From Tubulanus polymorphus (Eukaryota; Animalia; Nemertea): a stretch of DNA of 64,000 nucleotides. The stretch is from contig NC_134030.1 of assembly GCF_964204645.1 (NCBI RefSeq), forward strand, positions 8,893,222 through 8,957,221, written 5' to 3'. The position numbers and the translations under genes are program-made. This document shows positions 2 to 31,400 of this stretch, one piece after another; position 1 is the stretch's first letter, and each line of letters starts with the position of its first letter. The notes below the pieces were generated by a model that did no database searches, had not been told where the DNA came from, and was given only the letters and a program-made list of their open reading frames with translations.

Positions 2-1687
2 AACAACAATGCGTCAACTAGTCTGAACTATACGCCGCCGAATTCGCGGCGGCATACGATGTCCGAAAATCCGAACGCGCCGGGTCAATTCGCGGCGTCG
101 CATCGCAGTCAGGCGGCGAGCGGTTCCGTCAGCACGAACGCTAGTGAAAGCGTCTGTTCGTTATTGTCGTCTTATTCGCCGTTTCAAAGCTTCGATTCAA
201 ACATCGAAGCCGATCTGATGTCGAGCCAGTCGTCGTCAGTGGCGACGAATTATTCGCACCTGGGCGTGCCGGACACCGAACACAAGCGTCGATTCCTGCA
301 AGCGGGCGCCGAACGACCTCAATACTTGACGGTGTCGAGTTCGATGACGCCGCCGGACAATATGAAATATCAGAATGGCGCGAACAGTATACGCGACGAT
401 CCGCGCAATCGCAGTCAAACGCGTTCGCCGGTGAATTTCCGCGAGGGTCGCCGCGCGTCCGACGGTCTCGTGTCGCAGGATCTGATCGCATTCCGTCAGC
501 GATTGAAGGACAACATGAAGGTCGCCGGCATGCAAGAGTTGTACGCGAACGTGGAAAAAACGAGTCTATGGAAAGCTGATAAGACGTTGTGGGCGCCGGC
601 GAACTCGAATAACGAACAAACCTTTCCGCCGCCGAACATGGGCGCATTAAAAACGAAACGGTTGAGTTTTCCATTGGATAACAGTTTTAATCAACAAGTC
701 GTGCCTAATAATATGTTCCAGGGCATACCGGACAGTATTACGAGTAACGTCGACGGACTGGGCTTGTCGCCTCCGCAGAATATGACGCAAACGCCGACGA
801 CCGTGGCTACGTCGGCCGTCGGTTCGATGGAGTACGAAATGAAACCTCTTCAACAGAAATTGTTGCAACATCGTTTACAACAGAAACGCCAGTCGTTGCA
901 CAAAGCTATCCAACTGCAGCAACAGTTTCAACGCATGCACCTCGAACAGGGTCAGATACAGATGGCGTACCAGTCGGGTACATCTGCTCTGTCGCGGACT
1001 CCGTCTGCGACGCAGCAGTTAGGAGTAATAACGCAAACTGAATCTCAGTTCGTCGCCCAACAGCAGCAACAACAGTTAGTTCAGCTTTCTCTGTTACCGC
1101 AGTCGGAATCTCACTTCACCGCGGCGCAACATCAAATGGCGTCATCGTTGGTTCAACCGCACTCGTTCCTGACGCAGTCGGAATCGCAATTCATGCCACA
1201 ACCGATCGCGCCGTATACTCAACTACACACGGGCTCGTTGTTACAGCAATCTCATACGGGACTCTCCGACAACTTCATGGCACAAAAATTACATATAGAC
1301 AGTGCTGCGCACATCGGTCGCGGCGGCGCCGACATTCCATATCCGCGCAATTGTTCGCCGCCGCTCGTGCAAGTTCAAGGTCGTACGTCGCCGAATCAGT
1401 TAGTTCCGGGACTTCAGCCGCCGATTATCGGCAGCGGTGCGGCGGCCAGTGTTCGCCAGTCGGCTCAGCCGTCGACGATGTTGATGTCTTCGTGCCCTCC
1501 GTCGCGGTTAGCGATGCTGCGTAAACACGTCATACGGCAGTCGTCTTACAAACTCGCCCAGCAACAGACGGTCATGCCCCCGTATCCCGGAGACGAGATG
1601 GCTCTCTGGGAGTACGACTCGAGTATGGCGTTGTTCTCGTTTACGCCCGAAGACACGTTGTTGGAAGAATGTATGGACATCAACTAG
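2..1687 (+). CDS. SIK2: Salt-inducible kinase (SIK1/2-type), C-terminal coding region (5'-partial; kinase domain lies upstream of the window)
   Basis: The frame is open from nt 2 (NNNASTSLNYTPPNSRRHTMSE...), so the ATG at 59 is internal. It contains the SIK PKA/14-3-3 motifs RRHT(M)SE and SPVNFREGRRASDG, a Q-rich tail and RQSSYKLAQQQ. Stop TAG at 1685-1687. Paralog assignment (SIK1/2 vs SIK3) is less certain than the family call. Confidence 0.85.
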   Translation, partial: NNNASTSLNYTPPNSRRHTMSENPNAPGQFAASHRSQAASGSVSTNASESVCSLLSSYSPFQSFDSNIEADLMSSQSSSVATNYSHLGVPDTEHKRRFLQAGAERPQYLTVSSSMTPPDNMKYQNGANSIRDDPRNRSQTRSPVNFREGRRASDGLVSQDLIAFRQRLKDNMKVAGMQELYANVEKTSLWKADKTLWAPANSNNEQTFPPPNMGALKTKRLSFPLDNSFNQQVVPNNMFQGIPDSITSNVDGLGLSPPQNMTQTPTTVATSAVGSMEYEMKPLQQKLLQHRLQQKRQSLHKAIQLQQQFQRMHLEQGQIQMAYQSGTSALSRTPSATQQLGVITQTESQFVAQQQQQQLVQLSLLPQSESHFTAAQHQMASSLVQPHSFLTQSESQFMPQPIAPYTQLHTGSLLQQSHTGLSDNFMAQKLHIDSAAHIGRGGADIPYPRNCSPPLVQVQGRTSPNQLVPGLQPPIIGSGAAASVRQSAQPSTMLMSSCPPSRLAMLRKHVIRQSSYKLAQQQTVMPPYPGDEMALWEYDSSMALFSFTPEDTLLEECMDIN

Positions 1688-4492: not shown

Positions 4493-4701
4493 CAGGGTCC
4501 CTACAGATCAGTCACTCCAGAATTCAAGGACTTTTCACGGGGAAAATTTCAAATTTTGACCTGAACATTTTCTGATTACCAATTTCTTAAAATTCTAAGA
4601 GTTTTCAAGGACTTTAGGGCATTTTGGTCAAATTCTAGGATATTCAAGGACCTTGAAAAAAATTTTTGGTTTCAAGAAATCAAGGAGTCATGGGGACCCT
4701 G
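4493..4701. mobile_element. MITE with CAGGGTCCC TIRs and 5-bp TSD (hAT5-like)
   Basis: TIRs CAGGGTCCC / GGGACCCTG; AGGAT direct repeat at 4488-4492 and 4702-4706. Confidence 0.75.
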
Positions 4702-6371
4702 AGGATGCTGAACGCCTCACATAGAGATGTGTTCAGTTAAACTCAGCCGATACAAGGCTTATCGGAAGAAATATCTTCACCTTTTGCCTGATTGTAATGT
4801 GTAAATATGTCGATTGAATGTAACCGTTCGTTAAATTGAAACGGAATTGCTGTATGTTGTGTAGACTTTTGTAAATATATTTATTCGGAGTACACTGATG
4901 TTAAACGTGGGTTGATTAATCATTGAATAATCTGCTTCATTTGCTGATATGAGAGCCAAATTTACGATTGTGTTCAACTGATTGTTGTGTATATAATGAA
5001 TGCGATCTTGTGCGGACTGTACATTCTAATTGAAAAACACATGTGATGTTACCTCTGATTAATTTCATGCCCATCTCTCTACTAAACTGTTTATGGGTGG
5101 TTTTCACAATGTCCAGTTCCAAATTATGGGTCTTTATGGGTTCAAAACAGATTGTAAATAAGCCTTCTTAATCCTAATCTAATGGAATTCATTGGTTTCT
5201 TATATCTATGTACTTCTGGTCCTCAGTTGCAGATCAGAAATGATTTCGAACAGTATTTTGTATAAATTCACTGACTTGATTAGTTTTCCAAGTACATCGT
5301 ACCGGTACAAGGAGCCTGAGCTTGTCTATTCTGTGAGCTTGTCGATTCCGCATGCATTGTTCATGTCATGTGTTAATTTTCAGTTAGTACTTAGTAAACA
5401 CTCGTACAGTAAACAACCTAATCCCCTCTACAAGTTGTATTTTATGTTAGAAATGAGGATTTGTATGTTTCATGTACAATACAGTCAGTTGATGTGCTAG
5501 GTGTTAACACCGACTTAATGGATATTTCTTAAGAAATAAAATCGAAATATAGATCATTATTAGAGTTTACTTGATGCTTTTCATGGTTTGTAGTAGGTCT
5601 ACATAGCTACATTTTGGAGAAAAAGTGTTAGTTAAGGCCCTGATTTGCCCTTACATGATCAGTAAGTGATGTCTGAAGGGAAATGGGTGGTTCTAAGGGT
5701 GATGAGTGATGTTTCTTCATCAACCTGCACTACCAATCAAGATATATCCTTATGGTATGTTCCTTTGGACTCATTTACACTACCAATCCTGGAACATCAA
5801 ACAGCCATAAACCAGTTATCAGGCAGCGCACCGCCACCAGAGCTACCGTTGTCTGGATTTCCCCTAACTATATTGCAGAACCAGAGTACGCGCAACAGAA
5901 GCCTGTCATATTAAAACTACACAAAATGAAAGAAACATCGAATGAAAGTGACCAAGCTTGTTTTAAGTTATCTTATATTGCTGTATTAACATAATCACAA
6001 TGAATGCTACAACATAAACAATACATCACACATATCTCAGACTTTGAAAAAGTCAGCTAAGTCTATATCATAATAAGTTTAAAAACCCACTATTATACAG
6101 AATTTAAGATTTAAATAAAATTCTGTATATTCTGCTGTTCTCTTTGTCTGAGTGTGGTTATTCTTCCACAGTCTATCATTATGTTTTAATTTAATGAACA
6201 AGCATTGACCCTGCAGTCAAATTGAACCCTAAAATATGTCATAGTGTCTTGTTCCAAAGGGAAAGATACCTGTGATCAGTCTACAGTTAAACTATAAGAG
6301 AAATTGATGGTTGACATTCATTATTTATAACAGCGGTGAATTGATGTGATTACTCATTAGTTTTAAGCTAT

Positions 6372-6514
6372 AATGAAAGATGGCAGCACCTATCAAACGG
6401 TGTAGATGCATCATAGCAGTACTGGTGTGCCTGTTATTCAACACAGGGGCGGAATTTTTGAAAATCCTTAAATTATCCCCAGCGCTGGTGGGTATTGATT
6501 AATCACTGGTAGGG
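6372..6514 (+). mobile_element. Truncated copy of the piggyBac-type MITE family
   Basis: Shares GAAAGATGGCAGCACCTATCA, GTTATTCAACAC and the AGGG-TTAA end with the complete copy at 63527-63783. Confidence 0.6.
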
Positions 6515-6592
6515 TTAAACCCTAATGTGTCCCGTTCCAAAGGAAAGATACTACACGCGATCAGTTCACAACAGTCACGATAAAAGAGGGAT

Positions 6593-8227
6593 TCATGTTT
6601 GACACTCATTATTACATATGACTCGCCGAGCTTCGATCGGATCGATGCGTAACATGTTATAGTAAAGTTTCGCACGCTCCTCCAGATCGACAGTATTAGA
6701 ATCGCTCAAGCACATCTCGAACAGCTTACCCAACGCGTCCTGGCACTGCGCCGGCTGCGCGAAAAACAACTTCATCGCCGAATGCAACACGCTGAATTTC
6801 ACTTTCGCGACTTCGTTGTCGAGAGAATCGTCGTCGCCGTTGACGAAGTCGTCGATGACGTACGCGCCGTCGTCGAACTCGCCGCCATGTTCGCCGAGCA
6901 GATACAAGAGGGCGCTTTTACCGCCGCCGTCTTCGACGTAACTCGCGCACTCGCGAAGTCGACTGACGAGTCGTTTGACCAGCGCCGCGTCGGCTAACGG
7001 AATCGACTTCAATACGCAAAGAACGTTCGACGACAAACTACTCGATCGCAACTCGAGCATTTTCAGCAGTTTTTCGACGCAGACGTCGTAACAGTCTTTG
7101 TTTTGACGCGCGACCGCGATTTTACCCAAAGCGGCGACTGCGGCCACCGAAACATCGACGTTTATATCCAACGAATACATCGACAATTCTTCAACGATCT
7201 CGGTGACGTTTTCGTCCGTCGCGATCTTCGGGAGCATGGCGATTTTTTTCGTTTTTACGTACGTCGGTTCGTGAGCTTTGCAATAGAAGCTCGTCGCTTC
7301 TAAATCGACGGCGCGCGGCGAACCCACGTCTCCGCTATCGCTCGTCGTAGATGGCGCCAAAACCATACGATCGATATATTCCAGAACGGCGTAAACGAGT
7401 TCGCGATTATCCGACCCTAAAAAAGAAACCAACGCGCGGTGCGAACGTTTGAATATGTCCACTTGTAAATGCGGCATTTCAGCGACTAATCGCAAGAATA
7501 GTTCGACCGTTGCCCTGACAACCGACGCGTTGAAGTGATTCAGATACTTATCGAGAATATTCAGAATGTCGAAAACTTCGTTTTCATCTTTCGTCTCGTA
7601 ACGCTTCAAGACGTCGAACACGCGTATGACGCCCCACTCGGAGAACGACGAAACGCGATTCAACAACGAATACGCTATATTCTTATTGACGACGATGCCA
7701 CCTTCCGGTCGTAATAACTCGTCGAGCGTGTGCAAGCAGTTGACGACGACGATCGGATCGGTGTCGCGTATCATCGCGTAGAGCTCATCGACAATGCCGC
7801 ACTCGACGAGGAAACTCGCGTTCGACCTGGCGACGGAAACACAGTTCGAAACGGCGATGCGGCGCACGTACGCGCTGCGATCTTTCAGACCGGCGACGAC
7901 CGCGTGGCTGACGTAATCGCTGAAACTGTCGTCGCGCAATGCGCAGATCGTACGCAGCGCTAAACCGCGCACGGTCGGATTCGGGTCGGAGCAGTCTTTC
8001 ACCAGTGTGTTTATCGCCAGCAGTAACGTCTGCGGCGCGACGCCACCATACGACGACACGAACAGACATGCAAACTTTTTCACGCGCAGATCGTTGTGCG
8101 CGATTAACTTGACGATCGTCGGGAACAACGCTTCGATTTCGTTGTGGGAAAGTTTCGGCGACAGCGCCTGCTTCAAGAGACCTTCGAGTTCCTGAGCGCT
8201 GACATTCACGTCGCCTTTCGACTGCAT
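6593..8227 (-). CDS. AP4B1: AP-4 adaptor complex subunit beta (trunk only, intronless, 544 aa)
   Basis: Adaptin N-terminal trunk with beta4-diagnostic motifs DPNPTVRGLALRTICALR, GLKDRSAYVRRIAV, DPIVVVNCLHTLDELLRPEGGIVVNKNIAYSLLNR, FDILNILD and ERAKLYYNML (beta1/2 have DPNPLIRALAVRTMGCIR instead). In-frame TAA 12 nt upstream of the ATG; A at -3. Confidence 0.9.
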   Translation of the reverse strand: MQSKGDVNVSAQELEGLLKQALSPKLSHNEIEALFPTIVKLIAHNDLRVKKFACLFVSSYGGVAPQTLLLAINTLVKDCSDPNPTVRGLALRTICALRDDSFSDYVSHAVVAGLKDRSAYVRRIAVSNCVSVARSNASFLVECGIVDELYAMIRDTDPIVVVNCLHTLDELLRPEGGIVVNKNIAYSLLNRVSSFSEWGVIRVFDVLKRYETKDENEVFDILNILDKYLNHFNASVVRATVELFLRLVAEMPHLQVDIFKRSHRALVSFLGSDNRELVYAVLEYIDRMVLAPSTTSDSGDVGSPRAVDLEATSFYCKAHEPTYVKTKKIAMLPKIATDENVTEIVEELSMYSLDINVDVSVAAVAALGKIAVARQNKDCYDVCVEKLLKMLELRSSSLSSNVLCVLKSIPLADAALVKRLVSRLRECASYVEDGGGKSALLYLLGEHGGEFDDGAYVIDDFVNGDDDSLDNEVAKVKFSVLHSAMKLFFAQPAQCQDALGKLFEMCLSDSNTVDLEERAKLYYNMLRIDPIEARRVICNNECQT

Positions 8228-8275
8228 GTTTGAGAGTTATTTAGCGATTTAGCGGATGGTCCCCAAGAACGGCAG

Positions 8276-8503
8276 TTAGTTGTTGCTCGACGGAACTGGG
8301 TTTTCGTGAAGGTTCGACAATGCGACGTCCGTCCATTTCTGCTCTTGTTCGAACAATGTTTCGTTGCTATTGCCGTTGTCAGGCTCCAATTCGGGAAGTT
8401 CCATCTGAGGCACGGCGATATCTTCCATCGGTAGTTTGTCCGATTGCCACTGGGGGTCGCACAAGTCCATCAAATGACCGTCTCGCATCACTTCACTATC
8501 CAT
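8276..8503 (-). CDS. ANAPC13: Anaphase-promoting complex subunit 13 (75 aa)
   Basis: MDSEVMRDGHLMDLCDPQWQSDKLPMEDIAVP...ELPELEPDNG...EQEQKWTDVALSNLHE matches APC13 as I recall it (MDSEVQRDGRILDLIDDAWREDKLPYEDVAIP...EQEMKWTDLALQYLHE) over the full length. Strong Kozak context AAAATGG. Confidence 0.93.
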   Translation of the reverse strand: MDSEVMRDGHLMDLCDPQWQSDKLPMEDIAVPQMELPELEPDNGNSNETLFEQEQKWTDVALSNLHENPVPSSNN

Positions 8504-8574
8504 TTTCTATTCCTATTTCGATCAATTTGATGAGATGTGAAGTGCTGTTTCTCAACTGCTGTTGTCTACTGAAC

Positions 8575-9498
8575 CTGAAAAAGAAATGTTTACAAATTCA
8601 CGCGGGGAAGCCTAACCACCATGGCGCGGGACAAGAGCTCTGTTTGAAATAACCGAATTGAATGCGTCATTGGGGCAATTGACATTGTTGTGACAGACAT
8701 CAGCAGACTTGATGCTTTGCTTGTGGATAGATTTAAGCATTACGGAGTGTATAGTATTGGTAGATGGAGCGGAGGGCGCGTACACATAGGATCATGAGTA
8801 AATCTATTTTTTGGAATAAGGATGACCGAGAATACGTATCACTCAGTTATTCGGTATTCCCCCTATTATCAACTATAATTGCAAATTGGATTTACCAAGA
8901 CAAAATGACTTTTGTGCCAAAAAAAATGTCAAAGCGTATACATTACACTATTACTATATTACACAGATAGTAAATCTGTGATACGTGAAAAGCCATACAT
9001 GATGAAGATAAAGGGCCTGAATAAGCCCCCTCACCTGAATATTTCTGCCAAAATAATAATCTAGTTAAAAACGAATTTCATCGATCACAACTGGATGATT
9101 GCGCATACAGTTTCGCTGGAGCCACCCTTTCTCGAGCTATATCAATTCAATTCAATAAACTCTATATAGCGCGGAATACGGAGCGGACATCGGACCTAAA
9201 CGCAATATTGTTGACTTGTTCCAAATTTTGTACGATATTTCATTTTGCATAAGACTCTGAGTCGAGTAATTTTGAAACGATCATTCAAATAATGACTCCA
9301 AGCATAAACGTATTGTTGCTGAAAAGATGTGAACTTTTATTCAACGGGTCAAGGGCCAGTTTTTGCCACAGCGCAACGGCACACAACTTTGGAAGTTCGG
9401 CGTTATTCTTAAAAAATGATATTCCCAAAAATACAACCAGGAACTGTGCGCACAAACGCCCTTTCAAGTGAAACCTAAAATTCATTTCACGATCTTAC
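8575..9498 (-). other. Predicted 5'-UTR intron of the ANAPC13/AP4B1 transcript
   Basis: Acceptor CATTTCTTTTTCAG|G (exon starts 8574, 71 nt before the APC13 ATG); candidate donor CTAG|GTAAGA (upstream exon ends 9499). The pairing of the two sites is inferred. Confidence 0.55.
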
Positions 9499-10397: not shown

Positions 10398-10470
10398 GGT
10401 TTCGTAGTGTAGTGGTGATCACGTCCGCTTCACACGCGGAAGGTCGCGGGTTCGAGCCCCGCCGAAACCT
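10398..10470 (+). tRNA. tRNA-Val(CAC)
   Basis: 73-nt cloverleaf: acceptor GGTTTCG/CGAAACC, anticodon arm TCCGC-TT CAC AC-GCGGA, T arm GCGGG-TTCGAGC-CCCGC; T5 terminator at 10481-10485. Confidence 0.95.
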
Positions 10471-11629: not shown

Positions 11630-11847
11630 CGTATTTCTAATTCTGAAAGTCCCTCGCAGCATATGGAACTACTAGATCTGGAACTACTGATCTTAAAATG
11701 GAAAGTAAAAAGTTGCTCAAAAGGTTTCGGCGGGGCTCGTATTTCTAATTCTGAAAGTCCCTCGCAGCATATGGAACTACTAGATCTGGAACTACTGATC
11801 TTAAAATGGAAAGTAAAAAGTTGCTCAAAAGGTTTCGGCGGGGCTCG
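11630..11847. repeat. Perfect 108-bp tandem duplication carrying the tRNA-Val 3' end and terminator
   Basis: 11630-11737 equals 11738-11845; also visible as a repeated 36-aa string in ORF 11573..11881. Confidence 0.95.
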
Positions 11848-11902
11848 AACCCGCGACCTTCCGCGTGTGAAGCGGACGTGATCACCACTACACTACGAAA
11901 CC
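11830..11902 (-). tRNA. tRNA-Val(CAC), identical to the copy at 10398-10470
   Basis: Exact reverse complement of the first copy, ending in a TTTT terminator. About 190 bp of diverged upstream homology (10213-10397 vs 11903-12092). Confidence 0.95.
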
Positions 11903-25400: not shown

Positions 25401-28400
25401 ACAGCAATTCCAGTTAGGCAACTAATAATCATTTTCACTCTATTTAACTTTAATTGGGTTTGTATCGCGTGCATGATGATTTCGATCTGCATTTAAATAC
25501 AATATGCAGTGTCACGTTATAAGGACTTAAGGAAAATGTGTTAATGATTGAATATGAAAATGTCAAATGTACGTACTAAAATGGAACTAATCCAATACCA
25601 GTTAAAATTTCAAAAGTGTAGTTAGTAGTAATATGTTATGAACATCGGGCATATTTCATGGGCGGATTTAGAGGGTGGTCTCGGGGGTCTGGACCCTGCC
25701 TTCCCATTGAGGTTGCCCTTTTCCTCAAGACAAATATCGTTTAAACCTGAAATTGGGTTTTCACAAGATCGAGAGAGGAAAAGTTAGCTAACTAAGATAG
25801 GAGAAGACGGATGTTTGGTATCTTGCCAAACAAATGTCAGGATTCTGATCTGTACCCTGGATTGGTGGTACACACAAACACACACACAGGGTGATGATAT
25901 AGACAGGAAAGAACTTGATACTGAGAAGAGCATTATATTAATTACCCAGGGTCGGTTAAGGTTATCGCTATCAATAGCTAGCGAATACAGGTTACTAGGC
26001 CATGCTATTCAAACAAATGTACATGGTTTTATATATAATGCCATGTAAGCCCTATAGGCTACTAGATCAACCAAGCCGACAGTTCAATTCATATTTCATC
26101 TAAAGCATGGGTCAAGCGTTGGTCATTATCAAGGGGTCAGATGTTTAAATCAACTATGAAATTCTATCCCGCTAGAATTTCAAGAATTTCCAGGGATAAA
26201 CGAATGGCTTCTGAGAAGAAGCCACATTTAGAGTGACATTTAAGCGATCAAATACAGTCATCTTCCCTCCATTTAGCTATACTTATATTTGCAGCAACAA
26301 TGCAACTGGGGCTCGATATTGATGAATAGGTAGGCCCTAGTCTATTATTCTTCACAACTTCATTTGCTTAACATGCCCGAAGTAAAATCGCTATATACCT
26401 ATATAGGAAGTTAACGGCACGCATTCGCAAACCAGAAGTATAACATTATTTCATCAAATGCGGCCATGCGATATAACAACAACAACGTCGAGAGCTCCGG
26501 AATCTATTCGAATCTATTAAAGTAAAAAATTTCCGCGGTTGTTTTTATCGATCGAGGCACTTGTTGTGATCTAACAACGCGTCGTTGGGGAAGGGTTTAA
26601 ACCAGATAACACCAGTCGATGTCTAGTACACCGCACGCGCATATATAAATATATATATACACATTCGACATATGTTTCCAAATATGTAACAATATGAATT
26701 ATAGTTTCCCTCTAGGCCTATAGCCGCATAACGTCAATACAGTGCCACGCAGGGGCTTACTTACGAACAATAATGGACATAAACTGAAGTCAAACAGGCG
26801 GCTATTGTTCGGTTGTAATGCCTTTGTTTAGAATCGCTCATCCGCTCAATCTATGCTCTAGTCGATATTCCCACATATAACCCTAGATGAAGGCCCAGGG
26901 TGCCTACAGATCGGTCATTTCTGTCTAAAGGGGAAAATTCTCAAATTTCATGGAATTGTCGTCTGCATCACTACAATACTTCGGGTACTGTTAATCTCGA
27001 TAAACCGGTACTTCAGTGGTTTCGTAAGCAATTATTATCCCACTAAATTTTTGTATCAAATTCAGTAACCACCTAGCGGGGTGAAGAAAAAATCCTGGTC
27101 CCAACTGTTCTGATAAAGGTTTTGTTTTCTGTACACGAGAAGATTTTCAATTGCCTATTTAGCCTATTTAGCAAAGGAGAGTTTTAAAGGAGTATTGGAC
27201 ATTTCACTCAAAAAAAGTTTGAAGCACATTTAAAAGTGATCCCAGTTCGGGAGTAAAGAGTTTTCAACTAGGAATCAAGGATTCACACGGACCTGGGAAG
27301 CGCGGGTACTACTCACCTAACATGCTGAACACACTCGACAAACAGAAAACAACAAAAGTCGGACTGCGCAACAAATGGAAGTCGAGCATTTCCTTAATGA
27401 CGTCCATCATCGCTTTCAAAGACGGGCAATATTTATTGAACATCGAGTCGGTGTAATACTGGTTTTCCGGTATGGAAGTCACCGACACGACGTACTCCTT
27501 GACGTCGGGCGTTGACACGTACTGCGGCACGCGCATCATGCTACCGCTGTATAGAATATCCTTGCGATACATCGGGCGCGCCATGTCCTTGCTGATCTGC
27601 TCGACGATCATGTCCTTCTCCTGTTCGAGACGCTGCTGCTCGGCGTACGGGTCGAGCTCGCCAGCGCTGCCACCCGCCGTGTGCAGACTCGACGCGCAGC
27701 TAGCCGGCAACGAGCCGCCGAACTTCAAACCGTTCGCGTTGACGAGCGGATTCGGATCGGTTCCGCGACGCGTCAGGCAGACCTGCAATGACTGCGTATC
27801 ACCGTCGGGACTTTGTTTTGGCACAGCGTAACCAGCCTGGCTGGTCGACGGATCGTTTGCGCCGTTCTTCGGCGACGGCCCGGCGCCTGGAGTTCGATTT
27901 CCGGACATGTTGTCCTGCGCGATACGGTTCATCATTTGATTACTTAAACTGATTCGCAAATGAGCCGGCAACTTGACTAATTCATTGTTTCGAGTGATCA
28001 CGCACCCGTCGAGAGAACCTTGCGATATCGTTCGTTGACGCGCTTTCTCCTCGATTATCTTTTGAAAGATCGACCCGCGGCGAATCTTGCTGCGCGGAAT
28101 GTCGCCCTCTTTGCGATACTTCCCGCGGTTTTTCGGTTTTGTATATTCCAACGGCCGGAACAACGCGCCGCCGATGCAACAGTTCAACACGATTCCGGCC
28201 ATGATCAGCAAACTGCCCTTCCAATCGTACTTTTCCAACAACGACTCGGCCAACGGCGCGAACACCAACGTTCCGATTCCTGAACCGCACACGGCTATTC
28301 CAGTTGCAAATGCGCGACGTCGCTCGAAGTAAAATCCAACGATGACGATCGACGGCAAATAAATCAAACCGAAACCGATTCCTACAATGGAAAATTCGAT

Positions 28401-31400
28401 AGCGCCATTAGAAAATATTTGTTAAACAGGGCGATAACTTTCTGCCCATTCATAAAATCCCTTGAGCGAATCACAAAAAATGTTACGATTCATTCATTCG
28501 TGTGTTGATTGATAAAGGAACACTTCGACAATAGCATCATCCAAATTCCGTTTTCCAGGACCCAGTTCCCCAGTTCTGAGTTAAGATATGACTTTGTGAA
28601 AATTAACTAATTTTAACTCACAGAGTTGACTCTAACTCACGATTGTGGATCCTGGTTCCTGGTAAAATTTGACTAATTCCCCAATTCCCTGAGAGGTTTC
28701 CAGGTCAGCAGCCACCCTGTTTTAGCGACATATCATTTCTTCAGGGATATATAATCACGAGATGGGATCGTGAACGGTCGTACTCTCCCACGGGGAGTAA
28801 TATTACATACCTCCAAATATTCCATACGCGACGATCAGAATCTCAATATTTGGAGCCATTATCGCCATGACGAAAGCGATCGTCGTAATGATCGCTCCCG
28901 CTATGGTAATGACTCGGCACCCGAATTTGTTTGCAAGGGCGCTGGCAAGTGGACCTGAAAAGCAAAAAAATAAATAACCAAAATGAACATCAATTTCATT
29001 AGCCTCAAAACCATTCATCTACATAATTTAAGCACCATGTAACCCTTCGTGTTCAACCAACCATTTAAACTCAAAATTGGGGAATAGGATACAATTAAAA
29101 TGTAAGTTGGATGATCCACTGATACCCGACTAGATAGAAGTGTCTTCTAAAACATGGATATCAGCTCCGGACTCAGGCACCCGGGACTGCCGTTTATTAA
29201 ACTGGGGGGGGGGGGGGATTATCTACTTCCTTTTCAATTGGGTTAACCCACTGGTCAAAGTCAAAGTCGATACCTCTCTATGAGACCAGTCGCAAAGTTA
29301 TTTCCTATGAGCAGCGGGGGCTTGGCATTCAACGATCTTCGCACGAAAATGCTGCAGAATTGAACGGCGATTTCGACGTATGTGGGACACAAAGGGTTAA
29401 TCACATTGAGCGTATAACGCGTTTTTAAACTGAAATACAATTTCAGTTCCCGTGTCGGGTAAATTATGAATTTCCGAAGTTACCAGTTCCGTTATAAAGG
29501 ATTATCATTCATCTTTTCATCACATTGCTGCGTTTCGTTTCGTAACTAGAATCCGTAGCACTGCTTACCCATAATGAGATAAATGCCGATCAAGAGGGAA
29601 CCGACCCATGATGTCGCCGATGTCGTCGAATGGAAGTGCTCTTGAAAAGCGATGAAGAATATGCCGAAACTGAAGCACACGCCATCAACGATTATATTGC
29701 AGAACAACGACGCGATCACGACGACCCATCCCCAGCCGCCGTCCGGAGGTACCGGCGGCACGAGATCGTCGTCGGCGACGATCTCGTCGTCTTCCTCTTT
29801 CGGTTTGTCGATCAAATTCTTCGTTACACCCATCGTTTTAAAATGAACATTTCTGGTTCTGAAAATAGATCGCGACACTGATTACAAATTTCCAATGCGG
29901 GCTCCCTACAGTAATATCTTGAGAAAATTTCACACTTCATGGAAGCACCTGCATCGCTTATATCCCATTTACGACAAGACGCCTCCAAAATCGGTACTGT
30001 TCATCTCAGTAAACTGTTAATTCAGTGGTTTCAAAAAGGAGATATTTATCTTTGACATAACTAACTCGCTAACCGCTTAGGGTTATCCAGCTTCCAACAG
30101 TTCCGAATCAGTCTTTTATACAACTTCGAAAACTAATTGCCCATTTCTCAAAACTGATGGAGTTTCTGACATTTTGCTCGAATTGGAAGAGTTTCAAGCA
30201 CCTTTTAAAAACATTTTCCGCTTTTCAATAAATCTTTTTTTAAGGAATCAAGGAATCGTCGCGACCTCGCAGTTACATCATATTTTCCATATTAATACTG
30301 TAATAAACCAGGCAGCAGTGAATTATTCAGTGACCTATTAATTTATTTCGAGTCAACGATCCTGGCTGGTAGCTTCCTGGAATTCATATCAAATATTGGA
30401 AGCATCTGACATGAACTATTACATATTCATTGACAGTATAAATTTCCCCATTGTGTTTACTGGATAGCCCTCCTGTAGTTGCCCCAGGTTACTACTTCAA
30501 TAGGGGTATATCAGTTCACTATAGAGGTATAGACCAATGGGAGGGATTGATTCGATCCACCGATCCAGAGCGCCTAGACGGAATTCTCGATAAAAACAAG
30601 GTCACCACGAGTTAACAGTAACCGATCAATATAGTGGCGGCAATATCCTGATCTGAACATCATAACATTTCTCAGAAAATGCTTCACGTTATTGTCAATT
30701 TACTTAATTCATCAATATCGCAGCGACACAAACGCAGACTAAATACAAACATAGTTTATGAAAAAACCACTCGGATTCATAATGAGACGTTTTTCACTAG
30801 GAATGCAAGAGGTAGTTCAGTTTGAACCAGTGTCATTCTCTCTTCACAATTTGTTTTAGAAGGGCAGCAGCCCCCTATTCATTTTTACATCCACCCCTCT
30901 GATAATCAGCCACTCCCTATATAATATCTGCTGCCCCCATATAAGTTGTTGACATTCTATCAGTGCATAATTGCTTTAAGAGTATATTTGAAAAATAGAA
31001 GATTACTGTACACCAAAATCAAGCTTAATTTTCTGTATATTTTTTAGGGGGAAGGGGATAGGGGATCAAAAGCCTCGCTAGTTCAGCAGCCACAATGTCG
31101 AAATGCAGCCCCTAAAAAATCCCATCATATGGAGAACATCGCGAACGGAAGGAAGTCGGGGGCTGGAAAATATTCCGTCTTTTTTTACCTTCTAATCCAA
31201 ACCTCTTCGGTGTATTCTTCTTCGAACGAAGAAATTTCATCATCCAAAAGTGAATAATTCAAATACGCTTGCATTTAGACCCGAATTCCTCACGCTTAAA
31301 ACGATTTAATATCCGAATGCGATTACAATATCGTTCAAAAAACCTGCGAAACCTCTTTCATACAATATCCGAAGTCAGTTTATGATTGTATTGTGAAAGC

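What the first reader, a model, noticed from the sequence alone, without database searches (positions are those of the whole stretch)
6593..8574. Apparent bicistronic ANAPC13-AP4B1 mRNA: two unrelated conserved proteins on one exon
Seen: the complete ANAPC13 ORF (8503-8276) ends only 48 nt before the ATG of an intact AP4B1 ORF (8227-6593) on the same strand. The spacer (CTGCCGTTCTTGGGGACCATCCGCTAAATCGCTAAATAACTCTCAAAC) has no AG dinucleotide, so it offers no cis- or SL-trans-splice acceptor. It also lacks AATAAA/ATTAAA and ATG, and two further in-frame TAA codons exclude a readthrough fusion. The only clear acceptor (8574) is upstream of ANAPC13. Known: animal dicistronic mRNAs are rare and typically pair a small conserved upstream protein with a large one (ASDURF-ASNSD1, SNURF-SNRPN, MOCS2). 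I am not aware of an APC13/AP-4 beta pairing. Inference: one mRNA encodes an APC/C subunit and a vesicle-coat subunit, with AP4B1 translated by reinitiation or internal entry, since the APC13 ATG has a strong Kozak context and internal Met codons follow.
Basis: partly seen in the sequence, partly recalled or inferred. Interest (0 to 1): 0.88.

Follow-up and report, generated by a model that had tools for sequence, protein, structure and literature searches.

The report
APC13–AP4B1 two-protein mRNA in a worm
In this marine invertebrate (probably a ribbon worm) the only gene for one subunit of a vesicle coat starts 48 letters after the end of a small cell-cycle gene on the same RNA; two-protein mRNAs of this type are known, but I found no report of this pairing, and the same small gene sits directly in front of other, unrelated genes in other animals.

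Summary
The anatomy is confirmed. APC13 (8503-8276) and AP4B1 (8227-6593) are each single-copy and lie 48 nt apart in one exon. Assembled contigs from two studies, RNA-like by their coverage, run unbroken across the spacer. One run splices a 5' exon (ending 9035) to the acceptor at 8574, and no joint falls between the ORFs. AP4B1 has lost an intron kept in four other spiralians and about 15 N-terminal residues; the spacer resembles the decayed remains of those residues (p 0.002-0.008, post hoc). This fits a known class, retroposition-born bicistrons (PMC13303939; Drosophila Apc11 lmgA-lmgB). APC13 and AP4B1 were not adjacent in any other locus checked. New here: APC13 also sits 6-97 nt before ZFAND1 in insect-like and before CIR1 in other animal contigs, and those copies have lost most internal AUGs. 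The window copy keeps five, so leaky scanning is unlikely and reinitiation is my best guess. Not shown: a full-length mRNA, the transcription start, or any AP4B1 translation. An internal promoter is the main rival.

The parts
9035..9083 (-). 3' part of non-coding exon 1 (true 5' end unknown); donor GT at 9034
   Evidence: X3 contig carries 49 nt on this side of the joint; donor sequence
9061..9081 (-). 6-codon uORF in exon 1, weak AUG context
   Evidence: lies inside the stretch covered by the X3 spliced contig
8575..9034 (-). 460-nt GT-AG intron in the 5' UTR
   Evidence: joint 8572/9033, ends CT..AC, run X3
8504..8574 (-). 5' UTR part of exon 2, behind the only T-rich acceptor of the region
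8276..8503 (-). APC13 (ANAPC13) ORF, 75 aa, single copy; start AUG with A at -3 and G at +4; four internal in-frame AUGs
8241..8336 (-). Out-of-frame 31-codon ORF inside APC13, good AUG context, ending in the spacer 13 nt before the AP4B1 start
8228..8275 (-). 48-nt spacer: no AG, no ATG, no stable fold, no TGGGA; read in the AP4B1 frame it resembles the missing first helix of AP4B1 with two TAA
   Evidence: resemblance
6593..8227 (-). AP4B1 ORF, 544 aa, intronless, single copy, trunk only, N-terminus about 15 aa short
8225..8241 (.). 17-nt direct repeat (14/17) whose partner is 6594-6610; the two copies hold the AP4B1 start and stop; possible target-site duplication or chance
   Evidence: p 0.007-0.011, post hoc
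5978..6592 (-). 3' UTR; RNA-like contigs end at 6097 (X2) and 5978 (X3); ATTAAA at 6195 and 6190, AATACA at 5987

Best explanation
One promoter upstream of 9083 makes a spliced mRNA of about 2.6 kb that carries APC13 and then AP4B1. The arrangement arose in this lineage when an intronless cDNA-derived copy of AP4B1 came to lie just behind the APC13 stop and the old AP4B1 locus was lost. The first 16 or so codons decayed into the spacer and a Met further in became the start. APC13 is made by ordinary scanning. AP4B1 is made at low level, most likely by ribosomes that reinitiate after stopping at the APC13 stop or at the short internal ORF that ends 13 nt before the AP4B1 AUG. Shown: anatomy, single copy, splice joint, contiguous RNA-like coverage, intron loss. 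Inferred: one molecule, retroposition, translation, and its route. My odds: RNA carries both ORFs about 0.9; AP4B1 protein comes mainly from it about 0.65; reinitiation is the most likely of three routes.
For: X2 contig 7730-8524 spans all of APC13, the spacer and 498 nt of AP4B1; X3 contig 7697-8384 crosses the spacer; the only joint near the ORFs is the 5' UTR intron. No canonical poly(A) signal before 6195. No T-rich acceptor after 8566. It is the only AP4B1 found in the genome, and exons of AP-4 sigma, mu and epsilon are present. The 544-codon frame is open, keeps 62 of 70 conserved columns, within the range of other homologues, and models as a full trunk, pLDDT 92.6. A phase-0 intron after codon 25-36 in Solemya, Lineus, Lingula and Owenia is absent here. 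No upstream ORF overlaps the AP4B1 AUG, which has A at -3. Published class with intronless second ORFs (PMC13303939).
Against: Only assembled contigs were available; the run types are not on record, and overlapping monocistronic RNAs would assemble the same way. Reinitiation after a 75-codon ORF is usually poor; viral cases need a TURBS element and under about 30 nt between stop and start (PMC10275272), and neither holds here. In the closest precedent LmgB protein was not detected from the dicistronic RNA and a monocistronic isoform exists. Polymorphism in AP4B1 is only weakly constrained (8 non-synonymous, 6 synonymous, pN/pS 0.40, P 0.08) and its branch is twice as long as that of Lineus. 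No poly(A) remnant or parental locus was found to prove retroposition; simple intron loss plus relocation fits too.
Confidence: 0.5

Rival explanations
1. AP4B1 has its own start site inside the APC13 coding sequence or spacer, and the long RNA is an APC13 mRNA whose 3' UTR happens to contain the AP4B1 ORF.
For: Contigs cannot show starts. Drosophila lmgB has an alternative promoter, and 114 of 159 fly dicistronic loci also make a monocistronic RNA for at least one member. Six AUGs precede AP4B1.
Against: No sign of it in the contigs, which are unbroken from inside or before APC13 into AP4B1 in two studies. A start after 8336 would leave a leader of about 110 nt at most, lying in coding sequence.
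Confidence: 0.22
2. Bicistronic, but AP4B1 is reached by leaky scanning or internal entry rather than reinitiation.
For: Leaky scanning is the tested route in green algae and in fly stoned and Snapin (PMC11892635). The window APC13 has only one out-of-frame AUG against 2-8 in unpaired copies, although its high GC3 could explain that.
Against: Strong first AUG and five internal AUGs, in the range of unpaired APC13 copies (4-9, median 6), whereas closely paired copies have 0, 0, 0, 2 and 2. The spacer has no stable structure (z 0.0 to 0.9).
Confidence: 0.12
3. A minor cis-splice (exon 1 to a weak AG at 8296 or 8286) or spliced-leader trans-splicing yields a monocistronic AP4B1 mRNA.
For: Those AGs lie after the last upstream AUG; contigs drop rare variants, and 79 loose ends were not displayed.
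Against: Both AGs have only 2-3 T in the tract against 9 at the real acceptor; no such joint or leader-like loose end was listed; the spacer has no AG.
Confidence: 0.08
4. AP4B1 is a barely translated, decaying passenger in the APC13 3' UTR.
For: N-terminal loss, long branch, pN/pS 0.40, and the lmgB precedent.
Against: Open 544-codon frame with conserved residues and coding-type GC3 of 0.67; no other copy found; partner subunits present.
Confidence: 0.08

Closest known systems
Retroposition-born human bicistrons, e.g. STREMI-SLC35A4 (PMC13303939); also MIURF-MIEF1, PYURF-PIGY, ASDURF-ASNSD1
   Same: Small conserved upstream protein plus larger unrelated intronless downstream ORF; both genes older than their union.
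   Different: Those are backed by long reads, ribosome profiling and conservation across vertebrates. This pair was found in one species, has no translation data, and the downstream protein is shortened at its N-terminus.
Drosophila lemming, lmgA (Apc11)-lmgB (PMC3372440)
   Same: A small APC/C subunit as first cistron, a spacer under 100 nt, internal in-frame AUGs.
   Different: lmgB is fly-specific, dispensable and was not detectably translated. AP4B1 is an ancient, single-copy complex subunit.
Drosophila dicistronic set (PMC4528330) and green-algal bicistrons (PMC11892635)
   Same: Unrelated partners; stop-to-start distance within the fly range of -34 to 319 nt.
   Different: Tested cases use leaky scanning with weak or few upstream AUGs, which this locus lacks. 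The fly list has a CG33981-fab1 pair 88 nt apart; I recall CG33981 as fly Apc13 but could not verify it.
TURBS termination-reinitiation (caliciviruses, influenza B; PMC10275272)
   Same: Second ORF starts shortly after the stop of a full ORF.
   Different: No TGGGA core, no structure, and 48 nt exceeds the usual limit.

Membership tests
Bona fide bicistronic mRNA (criteria of PMC13303939) | Two ORFs each matching a known protein over most of its length | tested here: met
   APC13 full length; AP4B1 544 aa against 522-540 aa in named spiralians
Bona fide bicistronic mRNA | Both ORFs on one mature RNA molecule as the main form (long reads) | tested here: inconclusive
   Unbroken RNA-like contigs in two studies, but contigs only
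Bona fide bicistronic mRNA | Ribosome occupancy or peptides for both ORFs | not testable with these tools
   No such data reachable
Bona fide bicistronic mRNA | Purifying selection on both ORFs | tested here: inconclusive
   Conserved columns kept; AP4B1 pN/pS 0.40, P 0.08; no listed variant in the APC13 ORF; no close species for dN/dS
Retroposed downstream ORF | Loss of an ancestral intron | tested here: met
Retroposed downstream ORF | New genomic location relative to relatives | tested here: met
   No APC13 within 6-10 kb of AP4B1 in six loci and no AP4B1 near APC13 in about 60 loci, many of them short
Retroposed downstream ORF | Poly(A) remnant or target-site duplication | tested here: inconclusive
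   17-nt flanking repeat, p about 0.01; no A-tract
Leaky-scanning bicistron | Weak first AUG and few AUGs before the second ORF | tested here: not met
TURBS reinitiation | UGGGA core in a structured element and stop-start within about 30 nt | tested here: not met
SL trans-spliced operon | Acceptor before the second gene and leader on its mRNA | tested here: not met
   No AG in the spacer; no leader-like loose end listed. Whether the species trans-splices at all was not determined.
Readthrough or edited fusion protein | Single leaky or edited stop | tested here: not met
   Three in-frame TAA; RNA-like contigs match the DNA at all three
AP-4 beta subunit | Beta-4-type trunk | tested here: met
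AP-4 beta subunit | C-terminal appendage | tested here: not met
   Absent here and in Lineus, Lingula, Owenia, Solemya and Pomacea; the genome's only PF09066 matches adjoin the AP-1/2 beta gene

The most novel reading that the evidence does not exclude
The APC13 coding sequence is a recurrent host cistron that has independently captured unrelated single-copy genes in several animal lineages (AP4B1 here, ZFAND1 in insects, CIR1 in another group). In this species it delivers ribosomes to an essential coat subunit past six AUGs by a reinitiation mechanism that needs no TURBS, possibly helped by the acidic APC13 peptide, and the spacer preserves the fossil of the passenger's lost N-terminus.
Probability: 0.2. 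Interest if true: 0.75.

Novelty: new member of a known kind. Interest (0 to 1): 0.5.

Why it matters
It extends retroposition-born two-protein mRNAs to a phylum for which my searches found no report. It offers a natural comparison: the same small first cistron with purged AUGs (arthropod-like pairs) and with unpurged AUGs (here), so leaky scanning and reinitiation can be compared on one host sequence. It also warns annotators: such pairs get fused or misnamed (a beetle model joins Apc13p and the ZFAND1 domain).

Tried and rejected
Conserved APC13-AP4B1 synteny: not found. Second AP4B1 or APC13 copy: none. Readthrough fusion or editing of the stops: rejected. Structured spacer, IRES-like fold or TURBS: not seen. 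The NCBI name 'AN1-type zinc finger protein 1' on a Mactra APC13 suggested a mollusc APC13-ZFAND1 pair, but no ZFAND1 match lies within 10 kb downstream. Literature searches for ANAPC13+AP4B1, Apc13+dicistronic and ANAPC13+bicistronic gave no report of an APC13 bicistron. The identity of fly CG33981 could not be confirmed. Searches on trans-splicing in nemerteans were uninformative. The epsilon appendage family gave no match, but its control was silent too. The long ORF after APC13 in L072 stayed unidentified. The bacterial promoter scan is irrelevant and at chance level. The careful tree did not finish; only the quick tree is cited.

Full report
OBSERVATION. The 75-aa ORF is APC13 (Pfam; human APC13 E 4e-25). 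The 544-aa ORF is closest to AP-4 beta-1 (E 2e-107 against 2e-63 for AP-1/2 beta). Each is found once in the 268-Mb assembly. The spacer is 48 nt, in frame, without AG or ATG, with two further in-frame TAA; there is no AATAAA or ATTAAA until 6195. On a quick tree AP4B1 groups with the nemertean Lineus (SH-aLRT 92, below the starred level). Earlier AI notes also call this a ribbon-worm genome; I take that as a lead only.

TRANSCRIPT EVIDENCE. Four runs were laid, all as assembled contigs and none with its type on record. X1 covers everything and behaves as DNA. X3 (study P2) shows a GT-AG intron 9034-8575 joining a 5' exon to the acceptor at 8574, so it is RNA. X2 (study P1) has the same exon-limited coverage and is probably RNA. 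An X2 contig (7730-8524) spans all of APC13, the spacer and 498 nt of AP4B1. An X3 contig (7697-8384) also crosses the spacer. No joint or leader-like end was listed between the ORFs, and the three TAA codons match the DNA. Coverage ends at 6097 (X2) and 5978 (X3). Limits: contigs drop rare forms, cannot show starts, and would merge overlapping RNAs; 79 loose ends were not displayed.

IS AP4B1 ALIVE? The frame is open for 544 codons, with GC3 0.67 like neighbouring genes. It keeps 62 of 70 conserved columns; other homologues keep 49-70. It models as a complete trunk (pLDDT 92.6; TM 0.83 to the AP-4 core). Exons of sigma-4, mu-4 and epsilon are in the genome. Against: pN/pS is 0.40 on 14 variants (P 0.08) and the branch is twice that of Lineus. 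The missing appendage is shared with the other spiralians examined and is not a defect of this copy.

ORIGIN. Solemya, Lineus, Lingula and Owenia share one phase-0 intron near the start of AP4B1; the window gene has none. None of six AP4B1 loci has APC13 nearby, and none of about 60 APC13 loci has AP4B1, though many of those contigs are short. The window protein is about 15 residues short at the N-terminus, and the spacer is 16 codons long. Read in frame with X at the stops, the spacer aligns to helix 1 of AP4B1. It beats 99.2-99.8% of shuffles against three profiles and 99.7% of random genomic 48-mers, while the other two frames score at background. The first TAA faces a mostly Glu/Asp column. 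Pfam Adaptin_N also extends 21 nt into the spacer. The gain is only 2-3 bits and the test is post hoc. A competing clue is a 14/17 direct repeat holding the AP4B1 start and stop (p about 0.01), which could be a target-site duplication; both cannot be right. I put the decayed N-terminus at about 0.45, the duplication at 0.15, and neither at 0.4.

APC13 AS A RECURRENT FIRST CISTRON. Among 54 APC13 loci from metagenome contigs, several have another gene just behind the stop. AN1 zinc-finger ZFAND1 follows at 6 nt and 36 nt, with no AG, in two beetle-like contigs, and a relative follows at 82 nt with an acceptor. A second run carries the same 6-nt junction, and a firefly gene model fuses Apc13p to the ZFAND1 domain. 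CIR1 follows at 68, 69 and 97 nt in three contigs of an unidentified animal group; L104 is spliced relative to L103 and L116 and still holds both ORFs. Two of those three spacers contain an AG, so trans-splicing is not excluded there. Looser cases are a ketoacyl synthase at 292 nt and an unidentified long ORF at 165 nt. In this genome CIR1 and the AN1 zinc-finger genes lie on other contigs. Internal AUG counts in APC13 are 0, 0, 0, 2 and 2 in the close pairs, 4-9 (median 6) in 30 unpaired loci, and 5 in the window. The unpaired set is not independent, as many sequences are close kin.

MECHANISM. The first AUG is strong and five more follow, so leaky scanning, the tested route in algae and flies (PMC11892635), is unlikely here. 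There is no TURBS core or fold, and 48 nt exceeds the viral limit (PMC10275272). Every upstream ORF, including a 31-codon out-of-frame one, ends before the AP4B1 AUG, which has A at -3. That layout permits reinitiation, and low output may suffice for a scarce coat (my inference). A 6-codon uORF in exon 1 could modulate this. An intronless second ORF also avoids a splice junction after the APC13 stop, which would favour mRNA stability (inference). The review notes peptide-dependent reinitiation in cellular mRNAs; APC13 has 17 acidic residues in 75, but a link is speculation. The main rival is an internal promoter, as for fly lmgB.

COMPARISON. It works like the retroposition-born bicistrons of PMC13303939 and resembles Drosophila lmgA (Apc11)-lmgB; flies have 159 dicistronic pairs. 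Membership is met for ORF homology, intron loss and relocation, inconclusive for the single molecule and for selection, and untestable for translation. The genome has other such pairs: I confirmed an AK6 C-terminus ending 49 nt before an intronless KIN17, and an open frame of unconfirmed identity ending 2 nt before SBDS.

VERDICT. A real locus and probably a true two-protein mRNA: a new member of a known kind. The recurrence of APC13 as first cistron and the probable fossil N-terminus add interest; translation of AP4B1 is unproven. Interest 0.5.

Noticed in passing
L102:45-1073, L107:127-1179, L126, L108:3001-3889, protein P0369: APC13 lies 6, 36 and 82 nt before an AN1 zinc-finger (ZFAND1-type) ORF in insect-like contigs, with few or no internal AUGs; a firefly gene model fuses the two.
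   Followed up: partly
L103:579-2350, L104:41-1548, L116:2455-4580: APC13 lies 97, 68 and 69 nt before CIR1; L104 is a spliced contig that holds both ORFs, and no AUG lies between the two starts in L103 and L104.
   Followed up: partly
L072:358-2330; L105:110-1603: APC13 followed at 165 nt by an unidentified ORF of over 525 codons (mollusc-like APC13), and at 292 nt by a ketoacyl-synthase ORF.
   Followed up: partly
L140:1068-2517; L139:1283-2145: Same genome: AK6 stop 49 nt before intronless KIN17; an open frame ends 2 nt before the SBDS start. Close stop-start pairs may be common in this species.
   Followed up: partly
L004, L007, L008, L064 and proteins P0103, P0105, P0110, P0124: Spiralian AP-4 beta lacks the C-terminal appendage and is encoded by one short and one 500-codon exon. 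No epsilon appendage match was found in this genome either, but that search had no working control.
   Followed up: partly
window 6515-6642 and 6222-6350: About 130 nt covering the end of AP4B1 and the start of its 3' UTR are duplicated about 290 nt downstream, around a multi-copy element.
   Followed up: partly
window 59-1687 (+) and 4500-5522: Gln-rich 542-codon ORF without Pfam match, probably the tail of a SIK-type kinase (from memory of a short motif); RNA-like contigs at 4500-5522 may be its 3' UTR, converging on the APC13-AP4B1 3' end.
   Followed up: no
window 10398-10470 (+) and 11830-11902 (-): Two tRNA-Val(CAC) genes in opposite orientation upstream of exon 1.
   Followed up: no
window 27309-29878 (-): Exons that look like a monocarboxylate-transporter-type MFS gene.
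   Followed up: no
L127:10001-10231: A Mactra APC13 is named 'AN1-type zinc finger protein 1' by its source, with no ZFAND1 match within 10 kb downstream; probably a name transferred from a fused model.
   Followed up: yes
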